From the NCBI GenBank assembly GCA_002269645.1, contig NIVC01000133.1, forward strand, positions 1-64,000: a stretch of DNA of 64,000 bases, read 5' to 3'. The notes under the pieces were generated by a model. The model did no database searches. It saw nothing but the letters and a program-made list of their open reading frames with translations, and was not told the origin of the DNA. A program made the translations under genes and the position numbers. Position 1 is the stretch's first letter; each line of letters begins with the position of its first letter. Origin of the DNA: Macrostomum lignano. Its lineage: Eukaryota. Below, in pieces: positions 1,205 to 64,000 of this stretch.

Positions 1205-3079
1205 GCTGTTCTACATGAGTATAAAGATGCTAACAAGCTGTAATTCGCGAAGCAATTAGAAGCAGAAAGAAAATACTTAGAAAAATAATAAAATTATTTT
1301 TATGGGTATACATTTGAATCAACTGAAACAATCAAACCTTTTGCTGGCTGCAATTATATGACACAAAATTTGCGCGATTTTTAACGATGTACTGTGTACA
1401 TGCAGATGCAGGATACATTTTAATAGATACATATGACCAGGCAAACCGTTTAGCTGAAGCTGTCTATTGGGTGTAATTTGAACTTTGACAGTAATCCTGA
1501 GCATTTCAGTATGCGTTCAGTACATTATGTGTATGAATACTTTAAAAATCCCCAGACTATATGCTGATATAATGCTATTATGACTAATTTACAATAGAAG
1601 CATGAATTTTAATTTAGAAATAGTTTTAATAATTCCCTTCTACAGACAAAACTGCGCTATTTCACTAGCATTTTTGTGTCAAATTAAAAATACCCATACG
1701 AATTGTATATGTGCAAATTGTTTTGTACACTCTCTCTCTCTCTCGTAAATTGAACTCAAGTTGAATTGCGGGAAGCAAAAACAGAGATAGACTCAATTTT
1801 ACATGAATTTTACACACTCTGTACACGTATTTGGGCTTGCGTGTGTAATTTTTACATTTATTGGCATTTTTTAAAGCCAAGAAAGACAACTCGGCAAAAT
1901 TCTTTCACAATCTTCAGGACATGATATCCATAGAAAACGCCCACACGAAAAGCAATTCCAACAAGCTGCCCTGCATGTGCGCAAGTTGCGAGGCTTTTAG
2001 CTACACTTTTTATGCATGTGGCCAAGAATAAAGACGAGAAGCGAAGAAGCGACAACAGTGCCAGTCTACGGTCGAATTTCCTTTGGCACAGGGAGAGAGA
2101 GACGCAAGGGTACAGCAGAAGTGTTCTACTGAAGTATTATAGTTCACGGGCAACAATTCGTACGGGTTCTGTGTTCGTTGTTCTCACAGAAAAGAAGTCA
2201 CAGAAAATGACAGCATTAGGGTTTTGGACTAAGGCTACTCTTTTCTTGCTTACTTGAAGAAATGCAAAGTCTAGTTGGTATTAGGGACAGAGGCACATTG
2301 TGAGCTCTGCGTAGTGGCGTATTCCAGCTGCATTGGTGGAGCATATAATGGCCCTCTTGAGTTCTGTCTTCTCTTGTCTTGGCTAAGCTTATTCGAATTC
2401 GAATGTGTGGTCAGCTGGGTTTCCGAGCACACTTAGCAGTCGGACTGTACATCCAGACTTTTAAGTGACAGAAAGAAGGGTAAGCGGAAAACTATTTTGG
2501 GAATAAAAACAGTGAACACCAGACCCGGAAAGTGAGGCCAGCGTGGCCCCGCACTGACGTATAGGCGCGATTCTAATTTTAACTCTGTGCGTAACTCTTT
2601 CAACAATCTGAAACTGCAATGACGTTTGACGCCAAAAATTTGGCAATGGGAGGGGAGGTTGGTTAAACTATTCCGTATGCCCATCTGAGTGGGTGAGGGT
2701 GAGGTGCACCCGCCATTGGAACTGCTACGAGCGTACATGCATGTACTCAGATTGCACATTGGGTAAGAAATAGAAGTAGGGCTGGGCGCGCTGTTGGCAT
2801 GCCAACGAGATGCAATATTGCAGGGACGAGGAGGGCCGCAGTGGAAAGGGCTTTGCTTGGGGCACGAAGAGAGGGTAGAGAGGGCAGAAAGAGAATATAA
2901 ACCCTCTCTCTTCTCTCACCGCCTTGCTACAGTGTAAAGTCGACGCGCGCACGGTTCTTACCAACTAGACTTAGCGGTATTGCGTACACGAAACACGTAT
3001 TTAATACGCCATACGCAACGCACATAAAGCTAGTAGGATAAGCACCAGTGCTCAGCAAATATCTATTCAACAGACAGAT

Positions 3080-5286
3080 ATGACTACAGAGGAGGAGCCA
3101 GTGTCGCTGTCGCTGCAAGAAATTCGCGTAGCAGATGGCTGCGATCAGACTGTCGAAAACGAAGTAACTCAGCTGAATCCGGACACAGCCACTGTTTCCG
3201 ATCAGTCGGACAGTGCGTCGGACGAAGAGCTAGCTGATGATCTAGACCTAGAACAGCTGGATGTTCTTGCTAAGCAGGACACAGAGGAGGCGCTGGAACG
3301 CCTTAAAATGTGGGTATGCAACAAATCTAGGAAGCTATCGCTATCTAGTCAGGATCGTGAGATCTTCGCCCGGCTCACCGAGAAGTATTTTAGCGAACTC
3401 AAGTCGCTGAGCAGCAAGGAGGCGGAGGCTGAACCTGGCACTTCCAGTGTTGTTAGGGAGGCGGATGCGGTTCAATCCTCGAGTCAGCCCCCGAGTCGGA
3501 CTTCCAGTCGAACGTCAAGCCCATTGCCCATGGATCCCGTCAGACGCAGGTTTGCGAGCGACACATCTAGCGAGGCAACTCGGGATATGCCAGTGAATGT
3601 CGAAGGATCCGATTCGGCTTCAGGGTCGGAACGTTCTGCAAAGATACTTCTGTTTCCTGAACACGCTGCCCTGTTCAATGACGACTCGGAAGAGCATCTC
3701 ATTATGCTTGAGGCGCTGCAGAATTTTCTGTCGGAAGAGCGAGACTACTTTCACTCGATCAGTTTAATTTCGCTCTTCAAGCTTTTCAAATACTTGCTAA
3801 TGTATCACCTGGAAAGCGAGTACGACTTCGAGAGCCGTAGCAAATCGGTGAATTTGTCTCGGACTACTGACACGCTGGTGTTCTACAAGCGCCTGTTTGA
3901 CACGGGCCTCGCCCCGCACACCTTCAGACAGGTCTACGAAAAGCTGACCGAAACACAGTCGCATCTGCAGATTAATGTTATCAACGATCGCATAACACGC
4001 TGGGAAAACTATCATGACATCTTTATGCTTCACGGCATGCTAACCGAGTGCTTTCAGGTGTACCAGTCGCGAACTGGAGTGGTCAGTGGATTGGAGCGCA
4101 TGAACTTCCGCTGCTCTGCCACGTGTTCCTTGTGCCTGCTCGATGATCAGTTGGTGGTGGCTCGCACCTGCTGCGGGCAGCATGTCTGCTACGCCTGCTA
4201 CAACGAGTGGGTCCGCACCAAAGTATATGCCCGCACCGTGGAAGTCGGCTGCCCCTGCTGTAGCTGCTTCCTCACCGTCAGCGAGATCATCGAATTCCTT
4301 GGCGACAGGGCTGATCGGTACTACGAAATATTGACGGACCTCAACGGCGATCCAAACAAGAAGACCTGCCCGCAGTGCAATATGGTGACGAAAAATCCAA
4401 ATGAAAAGGCCAGCAAGCGGCTCGGTGGCGAGCTGACTCGCTGTCAGCGCTGCGAGTTCAGTTGGTGCTTCCGCTGCCACTCGCCGCCACACCCGAATAT
4501 GTCCTGCAGCGCCAACAGTAGCGGCAAGCAGATGCTGCGCGACTGGGGTCTGGAGACCTACTTCGACGGGTCGCAGTTCATTCGGAAGGCTCGCAAGTGT
4601 CCGTCCTGCAAAGTGTACATCGAGAAGAATCAAGGCTGCAATCACATGACCTGCAACCGATGCAGCTATCAATTCTGCTACGTGTGCGGCAAGAACTGGC
4701 GCGCTGGCAACTTTGTTTTCGGTCGGCACAGCAGTCGCCTCAGCATATTCGGCTGCAAGCAGAAGCTGTTTCCGGGCAGACCGGCTCTGCGCAAGCTCGT
4801 CCGCGGAACACTCTTCGGTAGGTTGAGCCTATAACTAAATAGAATTTTACGGTTGAATCTTAGTTTGGATAGCTGGAAACAATTTTCCTTTCGAGAACTA
4901 AATGAATACATGTAGTATTGCCAGTAAATGTATTCTTAAACAATCCGATAGCAGCCAATCTTGCAATAAGTTTACCTGCAATGATTTACAAATTCGTAGC
5001 CTATGGCTGCATCGATAACGCTGGTGTTTGCCTAACAGCCTATAGCTAGCAGCGTTAGAGTTCGATCACTTCGTTCGCCCGCCGAGTAGGTGTTATAGTT
5101 AGCCCCAACACAATCTGCACTCTAATCTTTATTCGCTCCAATTCCCTTGTCTCATTGAATATTCTAGTCCTAGAGGCCACCGGTATAGTCATCGCCGTGC
5201 CAATCGGCCTCGCCCTGGTTATCGGCCTGAGCCCGATTCTCGGCGTCATTGGCCTGGGCGTGGTCATCTACAAATGCAAGCACTGA
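3080..5286 (+). CDS. RNF217: RBR (RING1-IBR-RING2) E3 ubiquitin ligase with C-terminal transmembrane tail, RNF217-like; exons 3080-4817 and 5168-5286
   Basis: RING1 CSLC..CCGQH.VCYAC..CPCC; IBR CPQC..CQRC..WCFRCHSPPH..C; RING2 CPSCKVYIEKNQGCNHMTC with the catalytic Cys. The post-RING2 string FGRHSSRLSIFGCKQKLFPGRPALRKLVRG matches the RNF217-type tail as recalled. A phase-1 donor GTAGGT at 4818 joins the acceptor at 5167, giving the hydrophobic VLEATGIVIAVPIGLALVIGLSPILGVIGLGVVIYKCKH*. Confidence 0.88.
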
Positions 5287-8305: not shown

Positions 8306-11300
8306 CTGATTTTCCAATTCAACATTGAGCAGACTGATATTGCCAGTGATGACTATCCATCTGGCGTCCTTAGGAGAGATGTCAGCTCTGTAGCTGGAGA
8401 CTATTCGCTTGTTGACTACAAGCTGCAATGTAGCGGCTTCTTAAACTGTGATCACAATCTGTGCTCTGAACTAACAACCAGAGCACAGTGTTTTACTGAG
8501 GCTTGGAATGTTAGATTGAGGCTTGGAATGTTAGAATGAGGCTTGGAATGTTAGATTGAGGCTTGGAATGTTAGAATGAGGCTTGAAATGTTAGAATGAG
8601 GCTTGGAATGTTAGATTGAGGCTTGGAATGTTAGAATGAGGCTTGCAATTGAAGTATCAACTATCGGACAGGGAAATCAACTATCGGACAGGGAAATCAA
8701 CATTTGGACAGGGAAATCAACTATCGGACAGGATAAGCAACTATCGGACAGGGAAATCAACTATCGCACATGGTAAGCAACGATCGGACAGGATAAGTAA
8801 CTATCGGACAGGGTAAGCAACTATTGGACAGGGAAATCAACTATCGGACAGGATAAGCAACTATCGGACAGGGAAATCAACTATCGGACAGGATAAGCAA
8901 CTATCGGACAGGGTAAGCAACGATCGGACAGGATAAGCAACTATCGGACAGGGAAATCATCTATCGGAAATGGTAAGCAACGATCGGACAGGGTAAGCAA
9001 CGATCGGACAGGATAAGCAACTATCGGACAGGGTAAGCAACTATTGGACAGGGAAATCAACTATCGGACAGGATAAGCAACTATCGGACAGGGAAATCAA
9101 CTATCGGACAGGATAAGCAACTATCGGACAGGGAAATCAACTATCGCACATGGTAAGCAACGATCGGACAGGATAAGCAACTATCGGACAGGGTAAGCAA
9201 CTATTGGACAGGGAAATCAACTATCGGACAGGATAAGCAACTATCGGACAGGGAAATCAACTATCGGACAGGATAAGCAACTATCGGACAGGGTAAGCAA
9301 CGATCGGACAGGATAAGCAACTATCGGACAGGGAAATCATCTATCGGAAATGGTAAGCAACGATCGGACAGGGTAAGCAACGATCGGACAGGATAAGCAA
9401 CTATCGGACAGGGTAAGCAACTATTGGACAGGGAAATCAACTATCGGACAGGATAAGCAACTATCGGACAGGGAAATCAACTATCGGACAGGATAAGCAA
9501 CTATCGGACAGGGTAAGCAACGATCGGACAGGATAAGCAACTATCGGACAGGGAAATCAACTATCGGACATGGTAAGCAACGATCGGACAGGATAAGCAA
9601 CTATCGGACAGGATAAGCAACTATCGGACAGGGTAAGCAACTATCGGACAGAGAAATCAACGATCGGACAGGGAAATCAACTATCGGACAGGATAAGCAA
9701 CTATCGGACAGGGAAATCAACTATCGGACAGGATAAGCAACTATCGGACAGGGAAATCAACTATCGGACAGGGAAATCAACTATCGGACAGGGAAATCAA
9801 CTATCGGACAGGATAAGCAACTATCGGACAGGGAAATCAACTATCGGACAGGGAAATCAACTATCGGACAGGGAAATCAACTATCGGACAGGGAAATCAA
9901 CTATCGGACAGGGAAATCAACTATCGGACAGGGAAATCAACTATCGGACAGGGAAGTCAACTATCGGACAGGGAAATCAACTATCGGACAGGGAAATCAA
10001 CTATCGGACAGGGAAATCAACTATCGGACAGGGAAATCAACTATCGGACAGGATAAGCAACTATCGGACAGGATAAGCAACTATCGGACAGGGAAATCAA
10101 CGATCGGACAGGGATAAGCAACTATCGGACAGGGAAATCAACTATCGGACAGGGAAATCAACTATCGGACATGGAAATCAACGATCGGACAGGGAAATCA
10201 ACGATCGGACAGGGAAATCAACTATCGTACAGGGAAATCAACGATCGGACAGGGAAATCAACTATCGGACAGGGAAATCAACTATCGGACAGGGAAATCA
10301 ACTATCGGACAGGATAAGCAACTATCGGACAGGGAAATCAACTATCGGACAGGGAAATCAACTATCGGACAGGATAAGCAACTATCGGACAGGGAAATCA
10401 ACGATCGGACAGGGATAAGCAACTATCGGACAGGGAAATCAACTATCGGACAGGGAAATCAACGATCGGACAGGGAAATCAACTATCGGACAGGGAAATC
10501 AACTATCGGACAGGGAAATCAACTATCGGACAGGATAAGCAACTATCGGACAGGGAAATCAACGATCGGACAGGGATAAGCAACTATCGGACAGGGAAAT
10601 CAACTATCGGACAGGGAAATCAACGATCGGACAGGGAAATCAACGATCGGACAGGGAAATCAACTATCGGACAGGGAAATCAACGATCGGACAGGGAAAT
10701 CAACTATCGGACAGGGAAATCAACGATCGGACAGGGATAAGCAACTATCGGACAGGGAAATCAACTATCGGACAGGGAAATCAACGATCGGACAGGGAAA
10801 TCAACGATCGGACAGGGAAATCAACTATCGGACAGGGAAATCAACGATCGGACAGGGAAATCAACTATCGGACAGGGAAATCAACTATTGGACAGGGAAA
10901 TCAACTATCGGACAGGGAAATCAACTATCGGACAGGGAAATCAACTATCGGACAGGGAAATCAACTATCGGACAGGGAAATCAACTATCGGACAGGATAA
11001 GCAACTATCGGACAGGGAAATCAACGATCGGACAGGGATAAGCAACTATCGGACAGGGAAATCAACTATCGGACAGGGAAATCAACGATCGGACAGGGAA
11101 ATCAACGATCGGACAGGGAAATCAACTATCGGACAGGGAAATCAACGATCGGACAGGGAAATCAACTTTTTGCTTTGCCACTCACTTTGCAATCGCCGTT
11201 ATCCGCCAGCAGTAGGTCGATGGTTCGAATCTCGCTAAACAGCGGCACCGGGCACAGCTCAGCCACTCGAGTCTGGCGGGCGTCGTTCATCCAGGCCAGG

Positions 11301-54800: not shown

Positions 54801-55322
54801 TTATAGACACAACTAAATATTTAATTTGGCTCTTGAGATGGAAGGCCTTTTTGTTTCAATAGATGGAATGGCATCGAAGAGTTTGTGCTGCTTTGCGCGT
54901 GTATTTATATATTTACAAACAACGCCAGATTGAGGGGCCAAGCCAAGGGAGGTGCGAAACAGGTGGCGTGGCGTGATTGGCTACGCCAACCCCCTGGCTT
55001 AGCGAGCCGGCTAGCGCGGTGCGCAACCACCCACCTCAGCTAGACAGAGGTTGGGGGGTTTCCAGTGCGGCTGCACTGGTACTGCCGGTCGCGTACAGTC
55101 TGGCCGCCACACTCTAAATATTTGAAGTCAAATACCAATATATTTTTATTGGGGCCTATATCATGTACTTTTTATACTTATCCTTAGTCCTTATGTTGTC
55201 TAACTACTATTTTAAAATGTCTTTTATGAGTTGAGTTTCAACTAGATAAATTCATTTAAATTTGACTAATTGCACTGCATGTGCACAGCGGCACCCCAGT
55301 CAGGGCAGGAGGCCAGCCCGCC

Positions 55323-58300
55323 ATGAGCACCGCCGCACCAGACGGCAATCTGGCCGCCTATTATGACCCTGGAGAGCGTCTGGCCGCTCTCGTACTGGAC
55401 TTAGTCGACAGCTTCCTCCTGGTTGCTAACCGTGCCGCTGTGGTTGCTTACGCGTCGTCCAATCTGTCTAAGTATCTCGATTGCACCGCTGAACAGCTGC
55501 GGCAGAGGCCCATTGTCTCGCTGCTGTATAGGGACGATCGGAGTTTACTTAAACCCTACTTAGAACAGCTCAGCAGTGAGTAGCTGTCAATTTTATTTGA
55601 AACTGTTTTCATATACGTATTTGCTGTACTTATAGTAGTACATAAATTGAATTTTTATCCACTTCAGGTTCATCACTGGTAAAGCGGACCTTGCCAAGCC
55701 AGTTGCGCTTCCGTCTGGATGTAGAAATCTCCGGCGGGTCTTCTGTTACCGCCAATGTAGAGGCCATCGTTAAACTGCAGCAGTTCCCGTTCAGCGAGGG
55801 TCAGTGCTGCTTAGTTTTTGTTGACCTTCTTTATGCAATCCTTGTACAAGCGGTTAAGAATGCTCGCAGATCATTCAGAATTGATCTGCTGTTGTCGCAC
55901 TTCTCTATACAAGTTTTTCTCTTTTGTCTCGCCTAATCTGTTTGGGTTGGACCTTAAAATTTCATGCCCCACACTTTCAACCTCGGCTTCTAACCCTCCA
56001 AGATTCTCAGTTGCTGGGCCCCCACCGCCACCCTCCAAGATTCTCAGTTGCTGGGCCCCCACCGCTACCCTCCAAGATTCTCAGTTGCTGGGCCCCCACC
56101 GCCACCCTCCAAGATTCTCAGTTGCTGGGCCCCCACCGCCACCCTCTCAGATCCTCAGTTGCTGGGCCCCCACCGCCACCCTCTCAGATCCTCAGTTGCT
56201 GGGCCCCCACCGCCACCCTCTCAGATCCTCAGTTGCTGGGCCCCCACCGCCACCCTCTCAGATCCTCAGTTGCTGGGCCCCCACCGCTACCCTCCCAGAT
56301 CCTCAGTTGCTGGTCCCCCACCGCTACCCTCCCAGATCCTCAGTTGCTGGGCCCCCACCGCCACCCTCTCAGATCCTCAGTTGCTGGGCCCCCACCGCTA
56401 CCCTCCCAGATCCTCAGTTGCTGGGCCCCCACCGCTACCCTCCCAGATCCTCAGACCCACGCCGCCAGCCCCAGCCCCTGGCACTGCAATGAATCCCCTA
56501 AAGCAGTGGATCGCGCACCCCCGCAGGCTGTCTGGAGCCAGCCCTAGTTTTCGTCTGTCGCCCGGCCGCGGCCCCGCAGCCTGAGCCCGTGCGGCGGCCG
56601 CCCAGCCTGCCAGCCCAGTTGCCAGTCGCAGGATTTTCTCTGCAGCCGCAGCAGAAACGGCCAACTCCCACTCTGGTTTGCGAGCTCAACTTGCCAGATT
56701 TAACTGTGCTGCGATCTGCTTGCAGGTCTGTGCGCGAATCTTACTTACAACAATTCACAATCGTGTTCTGTCCGCGTTATTTGAATCTGTTAGACTCAAT
56801 CGTTCATTAGTATATGTTTTTTTATAACTTATTTAGATTTTTATGTATAAAGCAAGCCTCTATTGCGGCTGGTACGTCTGAGGTAGGTTTTTATTATGGA
56901 TTGTCACTGGCGCTCTTGTCAGTCAATATCTATTCAATAATTTTATATCAGTAGTATTATCAGTAGTATGTATTTGGCCAAACCCAAATGCTACAGCTTC
57001 TACAGTAATTTTATCGCTCTTCAGTATCCAGTATGCCAGTGCATATGCCAATTAGCATGACGTATAGCAGATTTTCAACTTTCCACCTTACCGGCTCAGA
57101 TTCATTAACCCCCCACCCTGTCTGGCTTTAATAAAGCCTGTTAAATGAATCCTAAATTCACCCATAGGTGAAAAAGTTCACCCACTCTCAGATCCTCAGT
57201 TTGAGCAGTCATTCACCCACTCCCAGATCCTCAGTTTGAGCAGTCATTCACCCACTCCCAGATCCTCAGTTTGAGCAGTCATTCACCCACTCTCAGATCC
57301 TCAGTTTGAGCAGTCATTCACCCACTCCCAGATCCTCAGTTTGAGCAGTCATTCACCCACTCCCAGATCCTCAGTTTGAGCAGTCATTCACTCACTCCCA
57401 GATCCTCAGTTTGAGCATTCATTCACCCACTCCCAGATCCTCAGTTTGAGCAGTCATTCACCCACTCCCAGATCCTCAGTTTGAGCAGTCATTCACCCAC
57501 TCCCAGATCCTCAGTTTGAGCAGTCATTCACCCTCTCCCAGATCCTCAGTTTGAGCAGTCATTCACCCACTCCCAGATCCTCAGTTTGAGCAGTCATTCA
57601 CCCACTCCCAGATCCTCAGTTTGAGCAGTCATTCACCCACTCCCAGATCTTCAGTTTGAGCAGTCATTCACCCACTCCCAGATCCTCAGTTTGAGCATTC
57701 ATTCACCCACTCCCAGATCCTCAGTTTGAGCAGTCATTCACCCACTCCCAGATCCTCAGTTTGAGCATTCATTCACCCACTCCCAGATCCTCAGTTTGAG
57801 CAGTCATTCACCCACTCCCAGATCCTCAGTTTGAGCAGTCATTCACCCACTCCCAGATCCTCAGTTTGAGCAGTTATTCATCAACAAAGACCCTAGGAAA
57901 AAGTCAAAACCATTAATTACTTTTGATTGAACCTACAGAAATAAGTTTTGTAGATAGAATGGAATTGACACTTGAAGCTGTAATCGATGTGATGCTAGGA
58001 TTAACATGGACTCCCGCTGTTAACCACGCCACAGTCCTGAGCTAACGGCCAGCCTAGGCATCCTTGGCGAATACTTCCTCGGCAAACAATGGGGCCAACT
58101 GGTGGCGCAGTCCGACCGGCCCATCTGGCAAAGGCATTTGGACACGGCTGGTAAGGACTCCTCACCTACCTGACTGTCTCCTCACTCATCTGTCTCTTTC
58201 CTCGCTCACATGCCTCTGCTCACTCACCTGTCTCCTTGCTCACTCACCTGTCTCTTTCCTCACTCGTCTCCTTGCTCACTCACCTGTCTCCTTGCTCACT

Positions 58301-61523: not shown

Positions 61524-63474
61524 TTAAGTCTGACGCTTTTGCAAGCCGCCCTCGTCAATCTGCTTGTCCAGGTATTCATCAATAGCGGTGCTGAACTGCG
61601 GTCGCGTCGGTTTGCCTTTGTACTTTTTGCGCAGCCTCTGCTGCATGCCAACCTCCATAGCGTACCGGTCCGGCATCTTTGGCCGTTGAATGTCCAACAG
61701 AGGCGGCTCGATCAAAAGCTCCTGTGCGTGCGGCAGGCTGGTACCCGAGGCGTAGTCGCCGAACGGGTCAGCTGGCAGGGGCCGGCCGCCGCTGTACAGG
61801 CTGTAGTCGTAGAAGCGAAACGGCACAGGCGCTTCCAAGTAGCTGGAGTCGAATGCCTTCTCAACCTCGAGTTGCAGCTTATCGTATTGGTGCTTGCACA
61901 CTTGCACCTTGCCTACGCCCAGCAGCAGGCCCGACTGCGGGTCCAGGAACTGCACTAGCAGGTCACTGTGGCGATAGTCCAGCACGAGGTACTCGTCTCT
62001 GAATTGGGCAGGGTGGGCGGCCTTAATTGGAGGCCCAACTGGCTGGGCGATTCTAAAGGAGGATGAACTGGCTGGGCGATTCTTAAGGAGGATGAACTGG
62101 CTGGGCGATTCCTAATGAGGATAAACTGGCTGGGCGATTCCTAATGAGGATGAACTGGCTGGGCGATTCTTAAGGAGGATGAACTGGCTGGGCGATTCTT
62201 AATGAGGATGAACTGGCTGGGCGATTCCTAATGAGGATGAACTGGCTGGGCGATTCTTAATGAGGATGAACTGGCTGGGCGATTCCTAATGAGGATGAAC
62301 TGGCTGGGCGATTCCTAATGAGGATGAACTGGCTGGGCGATTCCTAATGAGGATAAACTGGCTGGGCGATTCTTAATGAGGATGAACTGGCTGGGCGATT
62401 CCTAATGAGGATGAACTGGCTGGGCGATTCCTAATGAGGATAAACTGGCTGGGCGATTCTTAATGAGGATGAACTGGCTGGGCGATTCCTAATGAGGATG
62501 AACTGGCTGGGCGATTCCTAATGAGGATGAACTGGCTGGGCGATTATTAATGAGGATGAACTGGCTGGGCGATTCTTAATGAGGATGAACTGGCTGGGCG
62601 ATTCCTAATGAGGATGAACTGGCTGGGCGATTCCTAATGAGGATGAACTGGCTGGGCGATTCTTAATGAGGATGAACTGGCTGGGCGATTCCTAATGAGG
62701 ATGAACTGGCTGGGCGATTCCTAATGAGGATAAACTGGCTGGGCGATTCTTAATGAGGATGAACTGGCTGGGCGATTCCTAATGAGGATGAACTGGCTGG
62801 GCGATTCCTAATGAGGATGAACTGGCTGGGCGATTATTAATGAGGATGAACTGGCTGGGCGATTCTTAATGAGGATAAACTGGCTGGGCGATTCTTAATG
62901 AGGATGAACTGGCTGGGCGATTCTTAATGAGGATGAACTGGCTGGGCGATTATTAATGAGGATGAACTGGCTGGGCGATTATTAATGAGGATGAACTGGC
63001 TGGGCGATTATTAATGAGGATGAACTGGCTGGGCGATTCTTAAGGATTATTTTGGAATGGCAGCCAGCCAGCCGCCTGCACCATCACCGCAGCACTGACT
63101 GACCTGCACAGGGGACAGGGATTGGCCCGGATGTAGACGCCCTCGGTATTGAAACAGCGCTGCCGCGGCTTAGACGCTTCAAAGGAGCCGCGCAGATTGC
63201 GCCTATAGTGGAACCAGACCGGCCGTTCGCCGTAGACCTCCTTGTAGGCTGCGCTAGCCATGTAGCGCAGGCTCTCGTCCAGCGTTCTCGGCGTGTACTG
63301 CGCGTACTTTACTGGTGGATTGCGCGAGCCGAGACGCTTGTTCCTGCCTGTGCCGACGCCTTCACCGTCGCCTGATGGCTGCGTGCACAGGGCCTGGGCC
63401 AGGCGGAGCCGGGGCAGCGGCAGAGCCAAGGTGGGCTGCTGCGCCGCTGGTAAAATTCGTCTGAGTGCCGACCA
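61524..63474 (-). CDS. MRPS18B: Mitochondrial ribosomal protein S18b (mS40); exons 63474-63104 and 61998-61524; initiator codon not found in the genomic frame
   Basis: YMASAAYKEVYGERPVWFHYRRNLRG..RQRC..NPCPLCR|DEYLVLDYRHSDLLVQF..VCKHQYDKLQLEVEKAFD matches the S18b family as recalled. A phase-2 donor GTCAGT at 63103 joins acceptor ATTCAG at 61999. Confidence 0.9.
62037..63046. repeat. 29-bp minisatellite (GGATGAACTGGCTGGGCGATTCCTAATGA), ~35 copies, about 91% of the MRPS18B intron
   Basis: Direct tandem units with CCT/CTT/ATT and GATG/GATA variants. Confidence 0.97.
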
Positions 63475-63928
63475 CTGCAAGCAGTGATTTGCTTAAGTTT
63501 ATTTTGAATTTTTTGATCCCAGGCCACACAGATTAACTAATTAGCTACATAGTACTGTTGGCACACAATGATTATAAACTATAATACAATAATAAGATAC
63601 TGTGTATATTAAAATATATTACATTATATGCTTTTCCTAATTAAAGAAAATATCAGGAAAATATTGGAGTTAGCAGAACAGTCATAGGAAATTCCATGAA
63701 AATTCTGTGGCTAGTTCAGCTACAGTAGAGATAAACCAATAAGGCGTGTTCTAATCTTAACAGTTAAAGTTGTTAATCTATCAATATTTATGCTAGTTTA
63801 AGGTCATATTTTTCTTTATTTCTTATTTTATATACTTTTAAGACTAGAAACATTGTTATATGCTTTTGATCTTTTTATTGTTTTTTTTACTGATTTCACT
63901 AAGAATATAGTTCATCCATCCTCTAGAA

Positions 63929-64000
63929 CCAGCGTGCCCAACGCTGCGCGGAAAATCCCAAACTGCCGCGCTGCGCGGAAATTTTTTGCCGCTGACAAAA
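63929..64000. mobile_element. Possible left end of a hAT-like element cut by the window edge
   Basis: CCAGCGTGCCCAAC resembles a hAT/Charlie TIR start. It is preceded by CTCTAGAA (nnnTAnnn) and followed by a repeated GCGCTGCGCGGAAA. Confidence 0.3.

What the first reader, a model, noticed from the sequence alone, without database searches (positions are those of the whole stretch)
63261..63500. MRPS18B has no genomic start codon; the initiator AUG may be supplied by spliced-leader trans-splicing
Seen: the frame is closed by TAA ~15 nt upstream of an acceptor CTGCTTGCAG (AG at 63476-63475). The first in-frame ATG (63261) lies inside the conserved domain. The exon starts in phase 0, so adding one AUG gives MWSALRRILPAAQQPTLALPLPRLRLAQALC.., an Arg/Leu/Ala-rich, acid-free presequence typical of mitochondrial import. 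The upstream ~450 nt is AT-rich with no convincing ATG-donor exon. Established: flatworm spliced leaders end in AUG, which can act as the initiator Met (shown in Schistosoma). Inference: an essential mitoribosomal protein whose translation depends on trans-splicing. The acceptor 6 nt before the RNF217 ATG (3073) would also be in frame.
Basis: partly seen in the sequence, partly recalled or inferred. Interest (0 to 1): 0.7.

Follow-up and report, generated by a model that had tools for sequence, protein, structure and literature searches.

The report
Start codon borrowed from spliced leader
In the flatworm Macrostomum lignano the gene for mitochondrial ribosomal protein mS40 (MRPS18B) has no start codon of its own, and almost certainly gets its AUG from the spliced leader added by trans-splicing; this mechanism is already known in schistosomes, so the finding is real but a new example, not a new kind of thing.

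Summary
The window is Macrostomum lignano contig NIVC01000133.1. On the minus strand a two-exon mS40/MRPS18B gene opens at 63474, directly after TTGCAG. An in-frame TAA lies 18 nt upstream. The first in-frame ATG (63261) sits inside the conserved domain.

- The single M. lignano spliced leader ends in ATG.
- TTGCAG matches the published trans-splice acceptor motif [T/C]TNCAG, and is the only match within about 740 nt.
- Three GenBank models from paralogous loci are "partial" and begin 0, 3 and 6 nt after that AG.
- Ten kb upstream holds no in-frame ATG exon with a GT[AG]AG donor.
- The 213 nt before the internal ATG are as constrained among the paralogues as the rest of the coding sequence, while the upstream region diverges about sevenfold faster.
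- With the leader's Met the N-terminal extension is 85 aa, typical of orthologues. From the internal Met it would be 13 aa.

The mechanism was described in Schistosoma mansoni in 2006. The S. mansoni orthologue keeps its own ATG, so this dependence is not shared with schistosomes. Verdict: new member of a known kind, modest interest, useful as an annotation correction.

The parts
63475..63480 (-). Trans-splice acceptor TTGCAG (AG at 63476-63475)
   Evidence: Sequence read. It matches the M. lignano trans-splice acceptor motif [T/C]TNCAG (PMC8629364). It is the only match in the 526 nt upstream plus the first 213 nt of the exon. It is conserved in all three paralogous loci.
63493..63495 (-). 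In-frame stop codon TAA closing the frame 18 nt upstream of the exon
   Evidence: The two paralogues carry TGA at the same position.
63262..63474 (-). First 71 codons of exon 1 (WSALRRILPAAQQPTLALPLPRLRLAQALC...), with no ATG in any frame; putative mitochondrial presequence plus the start of the conserved domain
   Evidence: Translation. There is 1 substitution (third codon position) among three paralogues, against about 7.6 expected at the upstream rate. There is no acidic residue before residue 37.
63259..63261 (-). First genomic in-frame ATG (residue 73 of the leader-initiated protein), inside the conserved domain
63104..63474 (-). Exon 1 of mS40/MRPS18B (371 nt, donor ag|gtcagt)
61999..63103 (-). 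Intron (1105 nt), mostly a 29-nt tandem repeat (62037-63043, about 35 copies); its length differs among paralogues (815, 1105, 1826 nt)
61524..61998 (-). Exon 2 of mS40/MRPS18B, ending in stop TAA at 61526-61524
   Evidence: The spliced protein is 100% identical to the M. lignano models.
63481..64000 (-). Presumed outron and promoter region: AT-rich, 8 ATGs, no usable ATG-donor exon; a GC-rich block with repeated TTCCGCGC at about 63940-64000
   Evidence: That this stretch is transcribed and then discarded is an inference.

Best explanation
The pre-mRNA of the M. lignano mS40/MRPS18B gene is trans-spliced at the acceptor TTGCAG|TGG (exon start 63474). The 35-nt spliced leader CGGTCTCTTACTGCGAAGACTCAATTTATTGCATG is joined there. 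Its terminal AUG then lies directly in frame with the exon and serves as the only available initiator, giving a 282-aa protein, MWSALRRILPAAQQ.... The first ~36 residues are acid-free and rich in Arg, Leu and Ala, and probably act as a mitochondrial import presequence. The AT-rich upstream ~0.5 kb, with 8 ATGs and an in-frame stop, is an outron that is discarded.

Shown here: the gene anatomy, the frame, the motif match, the absence of a cis alternative with a GT[AG]AG donor within 10 kb, the constraint on the pre-ATG codons, and the published leader sequence.

Inferred: that the leader is actually joined at this site, that ribosomes start at its AUG, and that the N-terminus targets mitochondria.
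For: 1. Organism and leader. The window is M. lignano Mlig_3_7 contig NIVC01000133.1. Its single leader ends in ATG, and 30-39% of its genes are trans-spliced (PMC8629364; PMC5730564). [quoted passage not shown]

2. Acceptor. TTGCAG fits [T/C]TNCAG and is the only fit in about 740 nt around the site.

3. Frame. Leader plus exon translates as MWSALRR..., with the next AUG 216 nt downstream.

4. Gene models. GenBank PAA89895.1, PAA88547.1 and PAA89868.1, from three paralogous loci, are all 'partial' and begin at W, S and A. That is 0, 3 and 6 nt after the AG, never upstream of it. The UniProt models begin LQW, i.e. exactly at TTGCAG. This is what an aligned leader-bearing cDNA would give, because the leader's end TTGCATG resembles TTGCAG (inference).

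5. No cis alternative. In 10 kb upstream of this copy there is no in-frame ATG-to-GT[AG]AG exon. In the other two copies the only such candidates lie inside a retrotransposon pol ORF 8-9.6 kb away and are not shared.

6. Constraint. Among the three paralogues the upstream 770 nt carry 26 substitutions plus indels (about 3.6%). Exon 1 carries 2 in 371 nt and exon 2 carries 3 in 475 nt, and 4 of those 5 are at third positions. The 213 nt before the internal ATG carry 1, against about 7.6 expected (Poisson P about 0.004).

7. Orthologues. Of 63 Met-starting mS40 proteins, 60 have at least 40 residues before the PVW..YRRN motif (median 97). M. lignano has 85 with the leader's Met and 13 from the internal Met. 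Invariant S68 and Y71 lie upstream of the internal Met. In 136 of 149 orthologue hits the alignment starts before that Met.

8. Precedent. In S. mansoni the leader AUG is in frame in 28% of trans-spliced mRNAs, and more than 40 cDNAs need it (Cheng et al. 2006 via PMC9851317).
Against: No leader-containing read, cDNA or ribosome footprint for this junction could be examined. The protein collection holds no transcript-derived MWSALRR... sequence.

'Partial' GenBank models are not diagnostic on their own. The neighbouring gene's model (starting at window 55284) also lacks a Met without any acceptor at its 5' end.

The three paralogues are only about 3% diverged, so the conservation argument rests on few substitutions, and gene conversion could flatten the differences.

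The amphipathicity of the N-terminus is not better than shuffled sequence, and no dedicated targeting predictor was available.

The donor motif GT[AG]AG covers only about 65% of cis donors, so a weak-donor upstream exon is not formally excluded.
Confidence: 0.8

Rival explanations
1. A cis-spliced upstream exon carrying the ATG exists. It would either have a weak donor or lie more than 10 kb upstream, and it was missed by all annotations.
For: About 35% of M. lignano cis donors lack GT[AG]AG. There are 144 in-frame ATG-to-GT combinations of any donor quality in the 10 kb upstream.
Against: None of these has a GT[AG]AG donor in this copy. The three options within the window encode 3-6 residues and have poor donors. 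The region upstream is transposon debris on the opposite strand. Three RNA-seq-guided models stop at the acceptor. The conserved upstream stretch shows 1-, 2-, 3- and 8-nt indels among paralogues, which is not coding-like.
Confidence: 0.05
2. Translation starts at the internal ATG (63261). The 213 nt upstream would then be a 5' UTR that happens to be open, and the protein would lack a presequence.
For: It is the first genomic ATG, and no ATG in any frame precedes it in the exon. Met is common in that alignment column. Some mitoribosomal proteins are imported without cleavable presequences (general knowledge).
Against: Homology to mS40 begins 7-15 residues upstream, with invariant S68 and Y71. 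The upstream 213 nt are constrained like coding sequence. Only 13 residues would precede PVW..YRRN, against a median of 97, and the 3 of 63 orthologues with fewer than 30 include two short models (80 and 163 aa) that look like fragments. If the mRNA is trans-spliced, the leader's AUG comes first and is in frame.
Confidence: 0.07
3. Non-AUG initiation occurs on an RNA that is not trans-spliced, for example at the in-frame TTG at 63480-63478, the only near-cognate start codon between the TAA and the exon.
For: the ORF listing reports a 146-aa TTG-started ORF from 63480. The TTG is kept in all three paralogues.
Against: The TTG is part of the acceptor motif itself. Its context is poor (T at -3, C at +4). 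The unspliced leader would carry 8 upstream ATGs. UUG is a weak initiator in animals (general knowledge).
Confidence: 0.02
4. The copies are decaying pseudogenes or assembly artefacts, so the missing start codon is damage.
For: M. lignano is a recent polyploid with many redundant copies.
Against: Three independently assembled loci share the same structure and intact 281-codon frames. Four of five substitutions are at third positions. No other mS40 gene turned up in the species.
Confidence: 0.02

Closest known systems
Schistosoma mansoni mRNAs that use the spliced leader's 3'-terminal AUG as initiator Met (Cheng, Cohen, Ndegwa & Davis, J Biol Chem 2006; called 'slORFs' in PMC9851317)
   Same: A flatworm leader ending in AUG is joined in frame to an exon that has no start codon of its own. 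The genomic frame is closed upstream of the acceptor.
   Different: The species is different (a free-living macrostomorph) and so is the gene. The S. mansoni orthologue of this gene does not use the mechanism: seven transcript contigs show its own ATG behind a 30-45 nt non-leader 5' UTR. Translation from the leader AUG was tested experimentally in S. mansoni; here nothing has been tested.
Mitoribosomal protein mS40 / MRPS18B (e.g. PDB 3J9M chain AO, 5AJ3 chain p)
   Same: Homologous over residues ~58-195 (E about 2e-21 to mammalian chains, 4e-36 to S. mansoni mS40), including the PVWxxYRRN and NPCPxCRDE motifs.
   Different: It has a flatworm-type C-terminal extension, shared with trematodes. 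Its start codon is not encoded in the gene.
Ordinary leader trans-splicing in M. lignano (Wudarski 2017; Ustyantsev & Berezikov 2021)
   Same: Same leader and same acceptor motif. It is a conserved housekeeping gene, the class enriched among trans-spliced genes.
   Different: Those papers treat the leader as a 5' UTR element and a tool for defining gene boundaries. Neither discusses genes that need the leader's ATG. Only PMC10468722 mentions in passing that the ATG is a likely start codon.

Membership tests
Leader-AUG-initiated flatworm mRNAs (slORFs) | The organism trans-splices a spliced leader whose last three bases are AUG | tested here: met
   The window is M. lignano. The published leader is CGGTCTCTTACTGCGAAGACTCAATTTATTGCATG (PMC8629364). 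All reported flatworm leaders end in ATG (PMC12582326).
Leader-AUG-initiated flatworm mRNAs (slORFs) | A trans-splice acceptor lies at the 5' edge of the ORF, with leader-containing reads joined there | not testable with these tools
   Indirect evidence only: a unique [T/C]TNCAG match, and three RNA-seq-guided GenBank models beginning 0-6 nt after the AG. No read data were reachable. The supplements of PMC5816591 and PMC5730564 do not list the gene.
Leader-AUG-initiated flatworm mRNAs (slORFs) | The leader's AUG is in frame with the main ORF, with no intervening stop | tested here: met
   Leader plus exon translates as MWSALRR... through to the stop, 282 aa.
Leader-AUG-initiated flatworm mRNAs (slORFs) | There is no genomic initiator: the frame is closed upstream of the acceptor and no in-frame ATG precedes the conserved region | tested here: met
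   TAA at 63495-63493. The first ATG is 213 nt downstream, inside the conserved domain. No ATG exon with a GT[AG]AG donor in 10 kb.
Leader-AUG-initiated flatworm mRNAs (slORFs) | Translation actually starts at the leader's AUG | not testable with these tools
   This needs ribosome profiling, a reporter or proteomics. It is supported only by coding-type constraint on the pre-ATG codons and by the N-terminal lengths of orthologues.
mS40 / MRPS18B | Sequence homology to mitoribosomal mS40, including the PVW..YRRN and CPxCRD motifs | tested here: met
   PDB mS40 chains at E 2e-21 to 2e-19. S. mansoni mS40 at 4e-36. 182 orthologues at E<=1e-10, the named ones being mS40/S18b. Invariant columns. Pfam Ribosomal_S18 is only weak (16.6 bits against a cutoff of 21).
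mS40 / MRPS18B | An N-terminal mitochondrial targeting sequence | tested here: inconclusive
   The composition fits: 4 Arg, 14 Ala/Leu and no acidic residue in the first 36 residues. The helical hydrophobic moment is not above shuffles (300 of 2000). No TargetP or MitoFates was available.

The most novel reading that the evidence does not exclude
M. lignano mS40 has lost its own start codon, whereas S. mansoni keeps a genomic ATG with its own 5' UTR. All three retained gene copies would then depend entirely on the spliced leader for initiation. That would make mitochondrial ribosome assembly in this regeneration model contingent on trans-splicing. It would also imply that some of the 'partial' protein models in the Mlig_3_7 annotation are in fact complete once the leader's Met is added; how many was not examined.
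Probability: 0.75. Interest if true: 0.35.

Novelty: new member of a known kind. Interest (0 to 1): 0.3.

Why it matters
This is a clean, checkable case of a conserved, probably essential gene that has handed its start codon over to the spliced leader. It extends a mechanism demonstrated in schistosomes to a free-living flatworm at the base of the phylum. Because the schistosome orthologue keeps its own ATG, it also shows that the dependence differs between flatworm lineages for this gene.

The practical value is for annotation. The GenBank entries PAA89868.1, PAA88547.1 and PAA89895.1 are labelled partial. The UniProt entries start with 'LQ' and are named 'ERIC3 protein'. The true product is most likely a complete 282-aa mS40 beginning MWSALRR.

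The case could also serve as a natural reporter for trans-splicing-dependent translation in a species where transgenesis works.

Tried and rejected
1. Transcript-level proof from the protein and contig collections. The exact 282-aa M-started protein is not in the collection, and the P0001 cluster holds only 3 GenBank and 2 UniRef genome-derived models. No Logan RNA-seq contig for M. lignano mS40 surfaced, although such contigs exist for S. mansoni.

2. Gene lists in paper supplements. No mention of MRPS18B, Mlig027301 or Mlig007758 in the text-held supplements of PMC5816591 and PMC5730564 or in any searchable full text. PMC8629364 has no held supplements. Wasik et al. 2015 is not held.

3. A spliced-leader RNA gene in the window: none.

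4. The N-terminal 72 residues alone against PDB sequences gave only chance-level eL28 matches (E of 0.4 or worse) and no mS40 presequence similarity. A resemblance to the human MRPS18B presequence that I recalled from memory was therefore not used.

5. Amphipathic-helix scoring of the presequence was not distinguishable from shuffles.

6. 'Partial' status in GenBank as proof of leader-AUG use. I rejected this as insufficient by itself, because the neighbouring gene's model (window 55284) is also Met-less without an acceptor at its start.

7. Phylogenetic footprinting of the outron. The three paralogues are too similar (about 97%) for anything beyond a rate contrast.

8. The metagenome and bacterial genome DNA scans were not used, because they cannot contain M. 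lignano transcripts.

Full report
**What is there**

On the minus strand the sequence reads ...aaataaacTTAAgcaaatcactgcTTGCAG|TGGTCGGCACTCAGACGA....
- The AG is at 63476-63475 and the exon begins at 63474.
- Translation from 63474 gives WSALRRILPAAQQPTLALPLPRLRLAQALCTQPSGDGEG...CPLCR, open to a donor ag|gtcagt after 63104.
- In the same frame upstream a TAA sits at 63495-63493. The whole upstream 526 nt are littered with stops.
- After a 1105-nt intron, filled with about 35 copies of a 29-nt repeat, exon 2 (61998-61524) continues DEYLVLDYRHSDLLVQF... to a TAA.
- The first in-frame ATG is at 63261-63259, codon 72 of the exon. No ATG occurs in any frame before it in the exon.

**Identity and origin**

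- The spliced protein is 100% identical to Macrostomum lignano entries.
- The 526 nt upstream of the exon are identical to GenBank contig NIVC01000133.1 of assembly GCA_002269645.1, i.e. Mlig_3_7.
- It is mS40/MRPS18B: E = 4e-36 to S. mansoni mS40 and E about 2e-21 to mammalian mitoribosome mS40 chains.
- There are 182 orthologues at E<=1e-10. The named ones are mS40 or 'S18b, mitochondrial' from trematodes, a snail, a springtail and an ostracod.
- The Pfam Ribosomal_S18 match is weak.

**Is the internal ATG a plausible start?**

No.
- Homology with mammalian mS40 starts at residues 58-66 of the M-prefixed protein. In 136 of 149 orthologue hits the alignment begins before the internal Met.
- In a nine-sequence alignment the invariant columns S68 and Y71 lie upstream of it.
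- Of 63 Met-starting orthologues with the PVW..YRRN motif, 60 have at least 40 residues before it (median 97). M. lignano would have 13 from the internal Met, but 85 if one Met is added at the acceptor.

**Is the pre-ATG stretch coding?**

M. lignano carries three near-identical copies of the locus (L001-L003).
- The 770 nt upstream of the acceptor show 26 substitutions and several 1-8-nt indels, about 3.6%.
- Exon 1 shows 2 substitutions in 371 nt and exon 2 shows 3 in 475 nt. Four of those five are at third codon positions.
- The 213 nt between the acceptor and the internal ATG carry a single third-position change, where about 7.6 would be expected at the upstream rate (Poisson P about 0.004).
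- Five of the upstream substitutions fall within the last 60 nt before the AG, so the change of regime coincides with the acceptor.

All three copies keep the acceptor and an in-frame stop (TAA or TGA) just upstream.

**Could an upstream cis exon supply the ATG?**

L002 gave 10 kb upstream, 9.5 kb beyond the window's end.
- In this copy there is no exon candidate that is in frame, open from ATG to GT, and has the GT[AG]AG donor that characterises about 65% of M. lignano introns.
- In the other two copies the only candidates lie inside a retrotransposon pol ORF 8-9.6 kb away and are not shared.
- Within the window the only ATG-to-GT options encode 3-6 residues and have poor donors.
- The DNA immediately upstream is a decayed hAT-type transposon on the opposite strand.

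**Does the organism offer the proposed solution?**

Yes.
- M. lignano has one 35-nt spliced leader, CGGTCTCTTACTGCGAAGACTCAATTTATTGCATG, attached to 30-39% of its genes (PMC8629364; PMC5730564).
- The enriched trans-splice acceptor motif is [T/C]TNCAG. TTGCAG at 63480-63475 fits, and it is the only fit in the 526 nt upstream plus the first 213 nt of the exon.
- Joining the leader to 63474 puts its ATG in frame: MWSALRR....

**Existing gene models**

- The three GenBank models built with the trans-splice-aware TBONE pipeline are all flagged partial. They begin at W, S and A, which is 0, 3 and 6 nt after the AG.
- The older UniProt models begin 'LQW', exactly at TTGCAG. I read this as a leader-bearing cDNA whose end TTGCATG aligned onto TTGCAG. 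That is an inference.
- 'Partial' alone is weak evidence. The neighbouring gene's model (from 55284) is also Met-less with no acceptor at its start.

**What is not shown**

I could not reach any read or cDNA spanning the junction, nor any translation data.

The N-terminus has the composition of a mitochondrial presequence: 4 Arg, 14 Ala/Leu and no acidic residue in the first 36 residues. Its helical amphipathicity is not better than shuffles, and no dedicated predictor was available.

Whether the outron is driven by the GC-rich TTCCGCGC block at about 63940-64000 or by a distant upstream gene is unknown.

**Comparison with what is known**

[quoted passage not shown] 2006, as summarised in PMC9851317, and in PMC12582326). 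A 2023 Macrostomum genome paper notes in a figure legend that the leader's final ATG is a likely start codon. The mechanism is therefore not new.

What is specific here is the gene and the lineage. The S. mansoni orthologue has its own ATG behind a 30-45-nt non-leader 5' UTR in seven independent transcript contigs. The dependence is therefore not shared with schistosomes.

**Verdict**

It awaits a simple read-mapping check.
- It is a new member of a known kind.
- Its main value is as an annotation correction and as a tidy example. Interest is about 0.3.

Noticed in passing
window 17411-41314 (minus-strand ORFs 16336-43319): A very large tandem array of a 231-nt (77-codon) unit, with about 93 copies in the main block, 70-97% matches across blocks and a strong AT skew. 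It is read by long minus-strand ORFs of up to 2811 aa, so it looks like a giant repetitive protein gene. A Pfam scan of one 1061-aa piece gave only weak hits near or below each family's cutoff.
   Followed up: partly
window 8656-11167: A 20-nt satellite (ATCAACTATCGGACAGGGAA) of about 125 copies, next to a second 20-nt repeat at 8497-8649.
   Followed up: no
window 62037-63043: The mS40 intron is almost entirely a 29-nt tandem repeat of about 35 copies. Intron length differs among the three paralogous loci (815, 1105, 1826 nt), presumably through copy number.
   Followed up: partly
window 3074-4834 (+): An RNF217-like protein with an IBR domain (Pfam IBR, E = 5e-15) has an AG 6 nt before its ATG, and that AG is in frame with a leader ATG. 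Trans-splicing there would add Met-Thr-Asp to the N-terminus. The hexamer CAACAG does not fit [T/C]TNCAG, and use of the site is unverified.
   Followed up: partly
window 55266-55330 (+): The GenBank model of the neighbouring 464-aa gene starts at 55284 without a Met and without an acceptor there. The likely true start is the ATG at 55324. A CAG acceptor at 55286-55288 would put a leader AUG out of frame. The upstream sequence aattgcactgcatg loosely resembles the leader's 3' end.
   Followed up: no
L002 6800-9440 (beyond the window's right end, opposite strand): A degenerate hAT-like transposon (BED zinc finger and a hAT dimerisation-type motif, broken into several ORFs) abuts the presumed mS40 promoter. 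A non-LTR-like ORF lies at L002 7091-7696. L001 and L003 carry an LTR-retrotransposon pol ORF further upstream.
   Followed up: partly
window 63940-64000 (-) and L001/L003 equivalents: This is the only GC-rich block in the AT-rich upstream region and contains repeated TTCCGCGC motifs. The other two paralogues have an extra 8-nt copy. It is a candidate core promoter shared with the divergent transposon relic.
   Followed up: no
UniProt A0A1I8I1M8 / A0A1I8GMM3 (P0001, P0006): The M. lignano mS40 entries are named 'ERIC3 protein' and begin with Leu-Gln. Both the name and the N-terminus look like annotation errors.
   Followed up: partly
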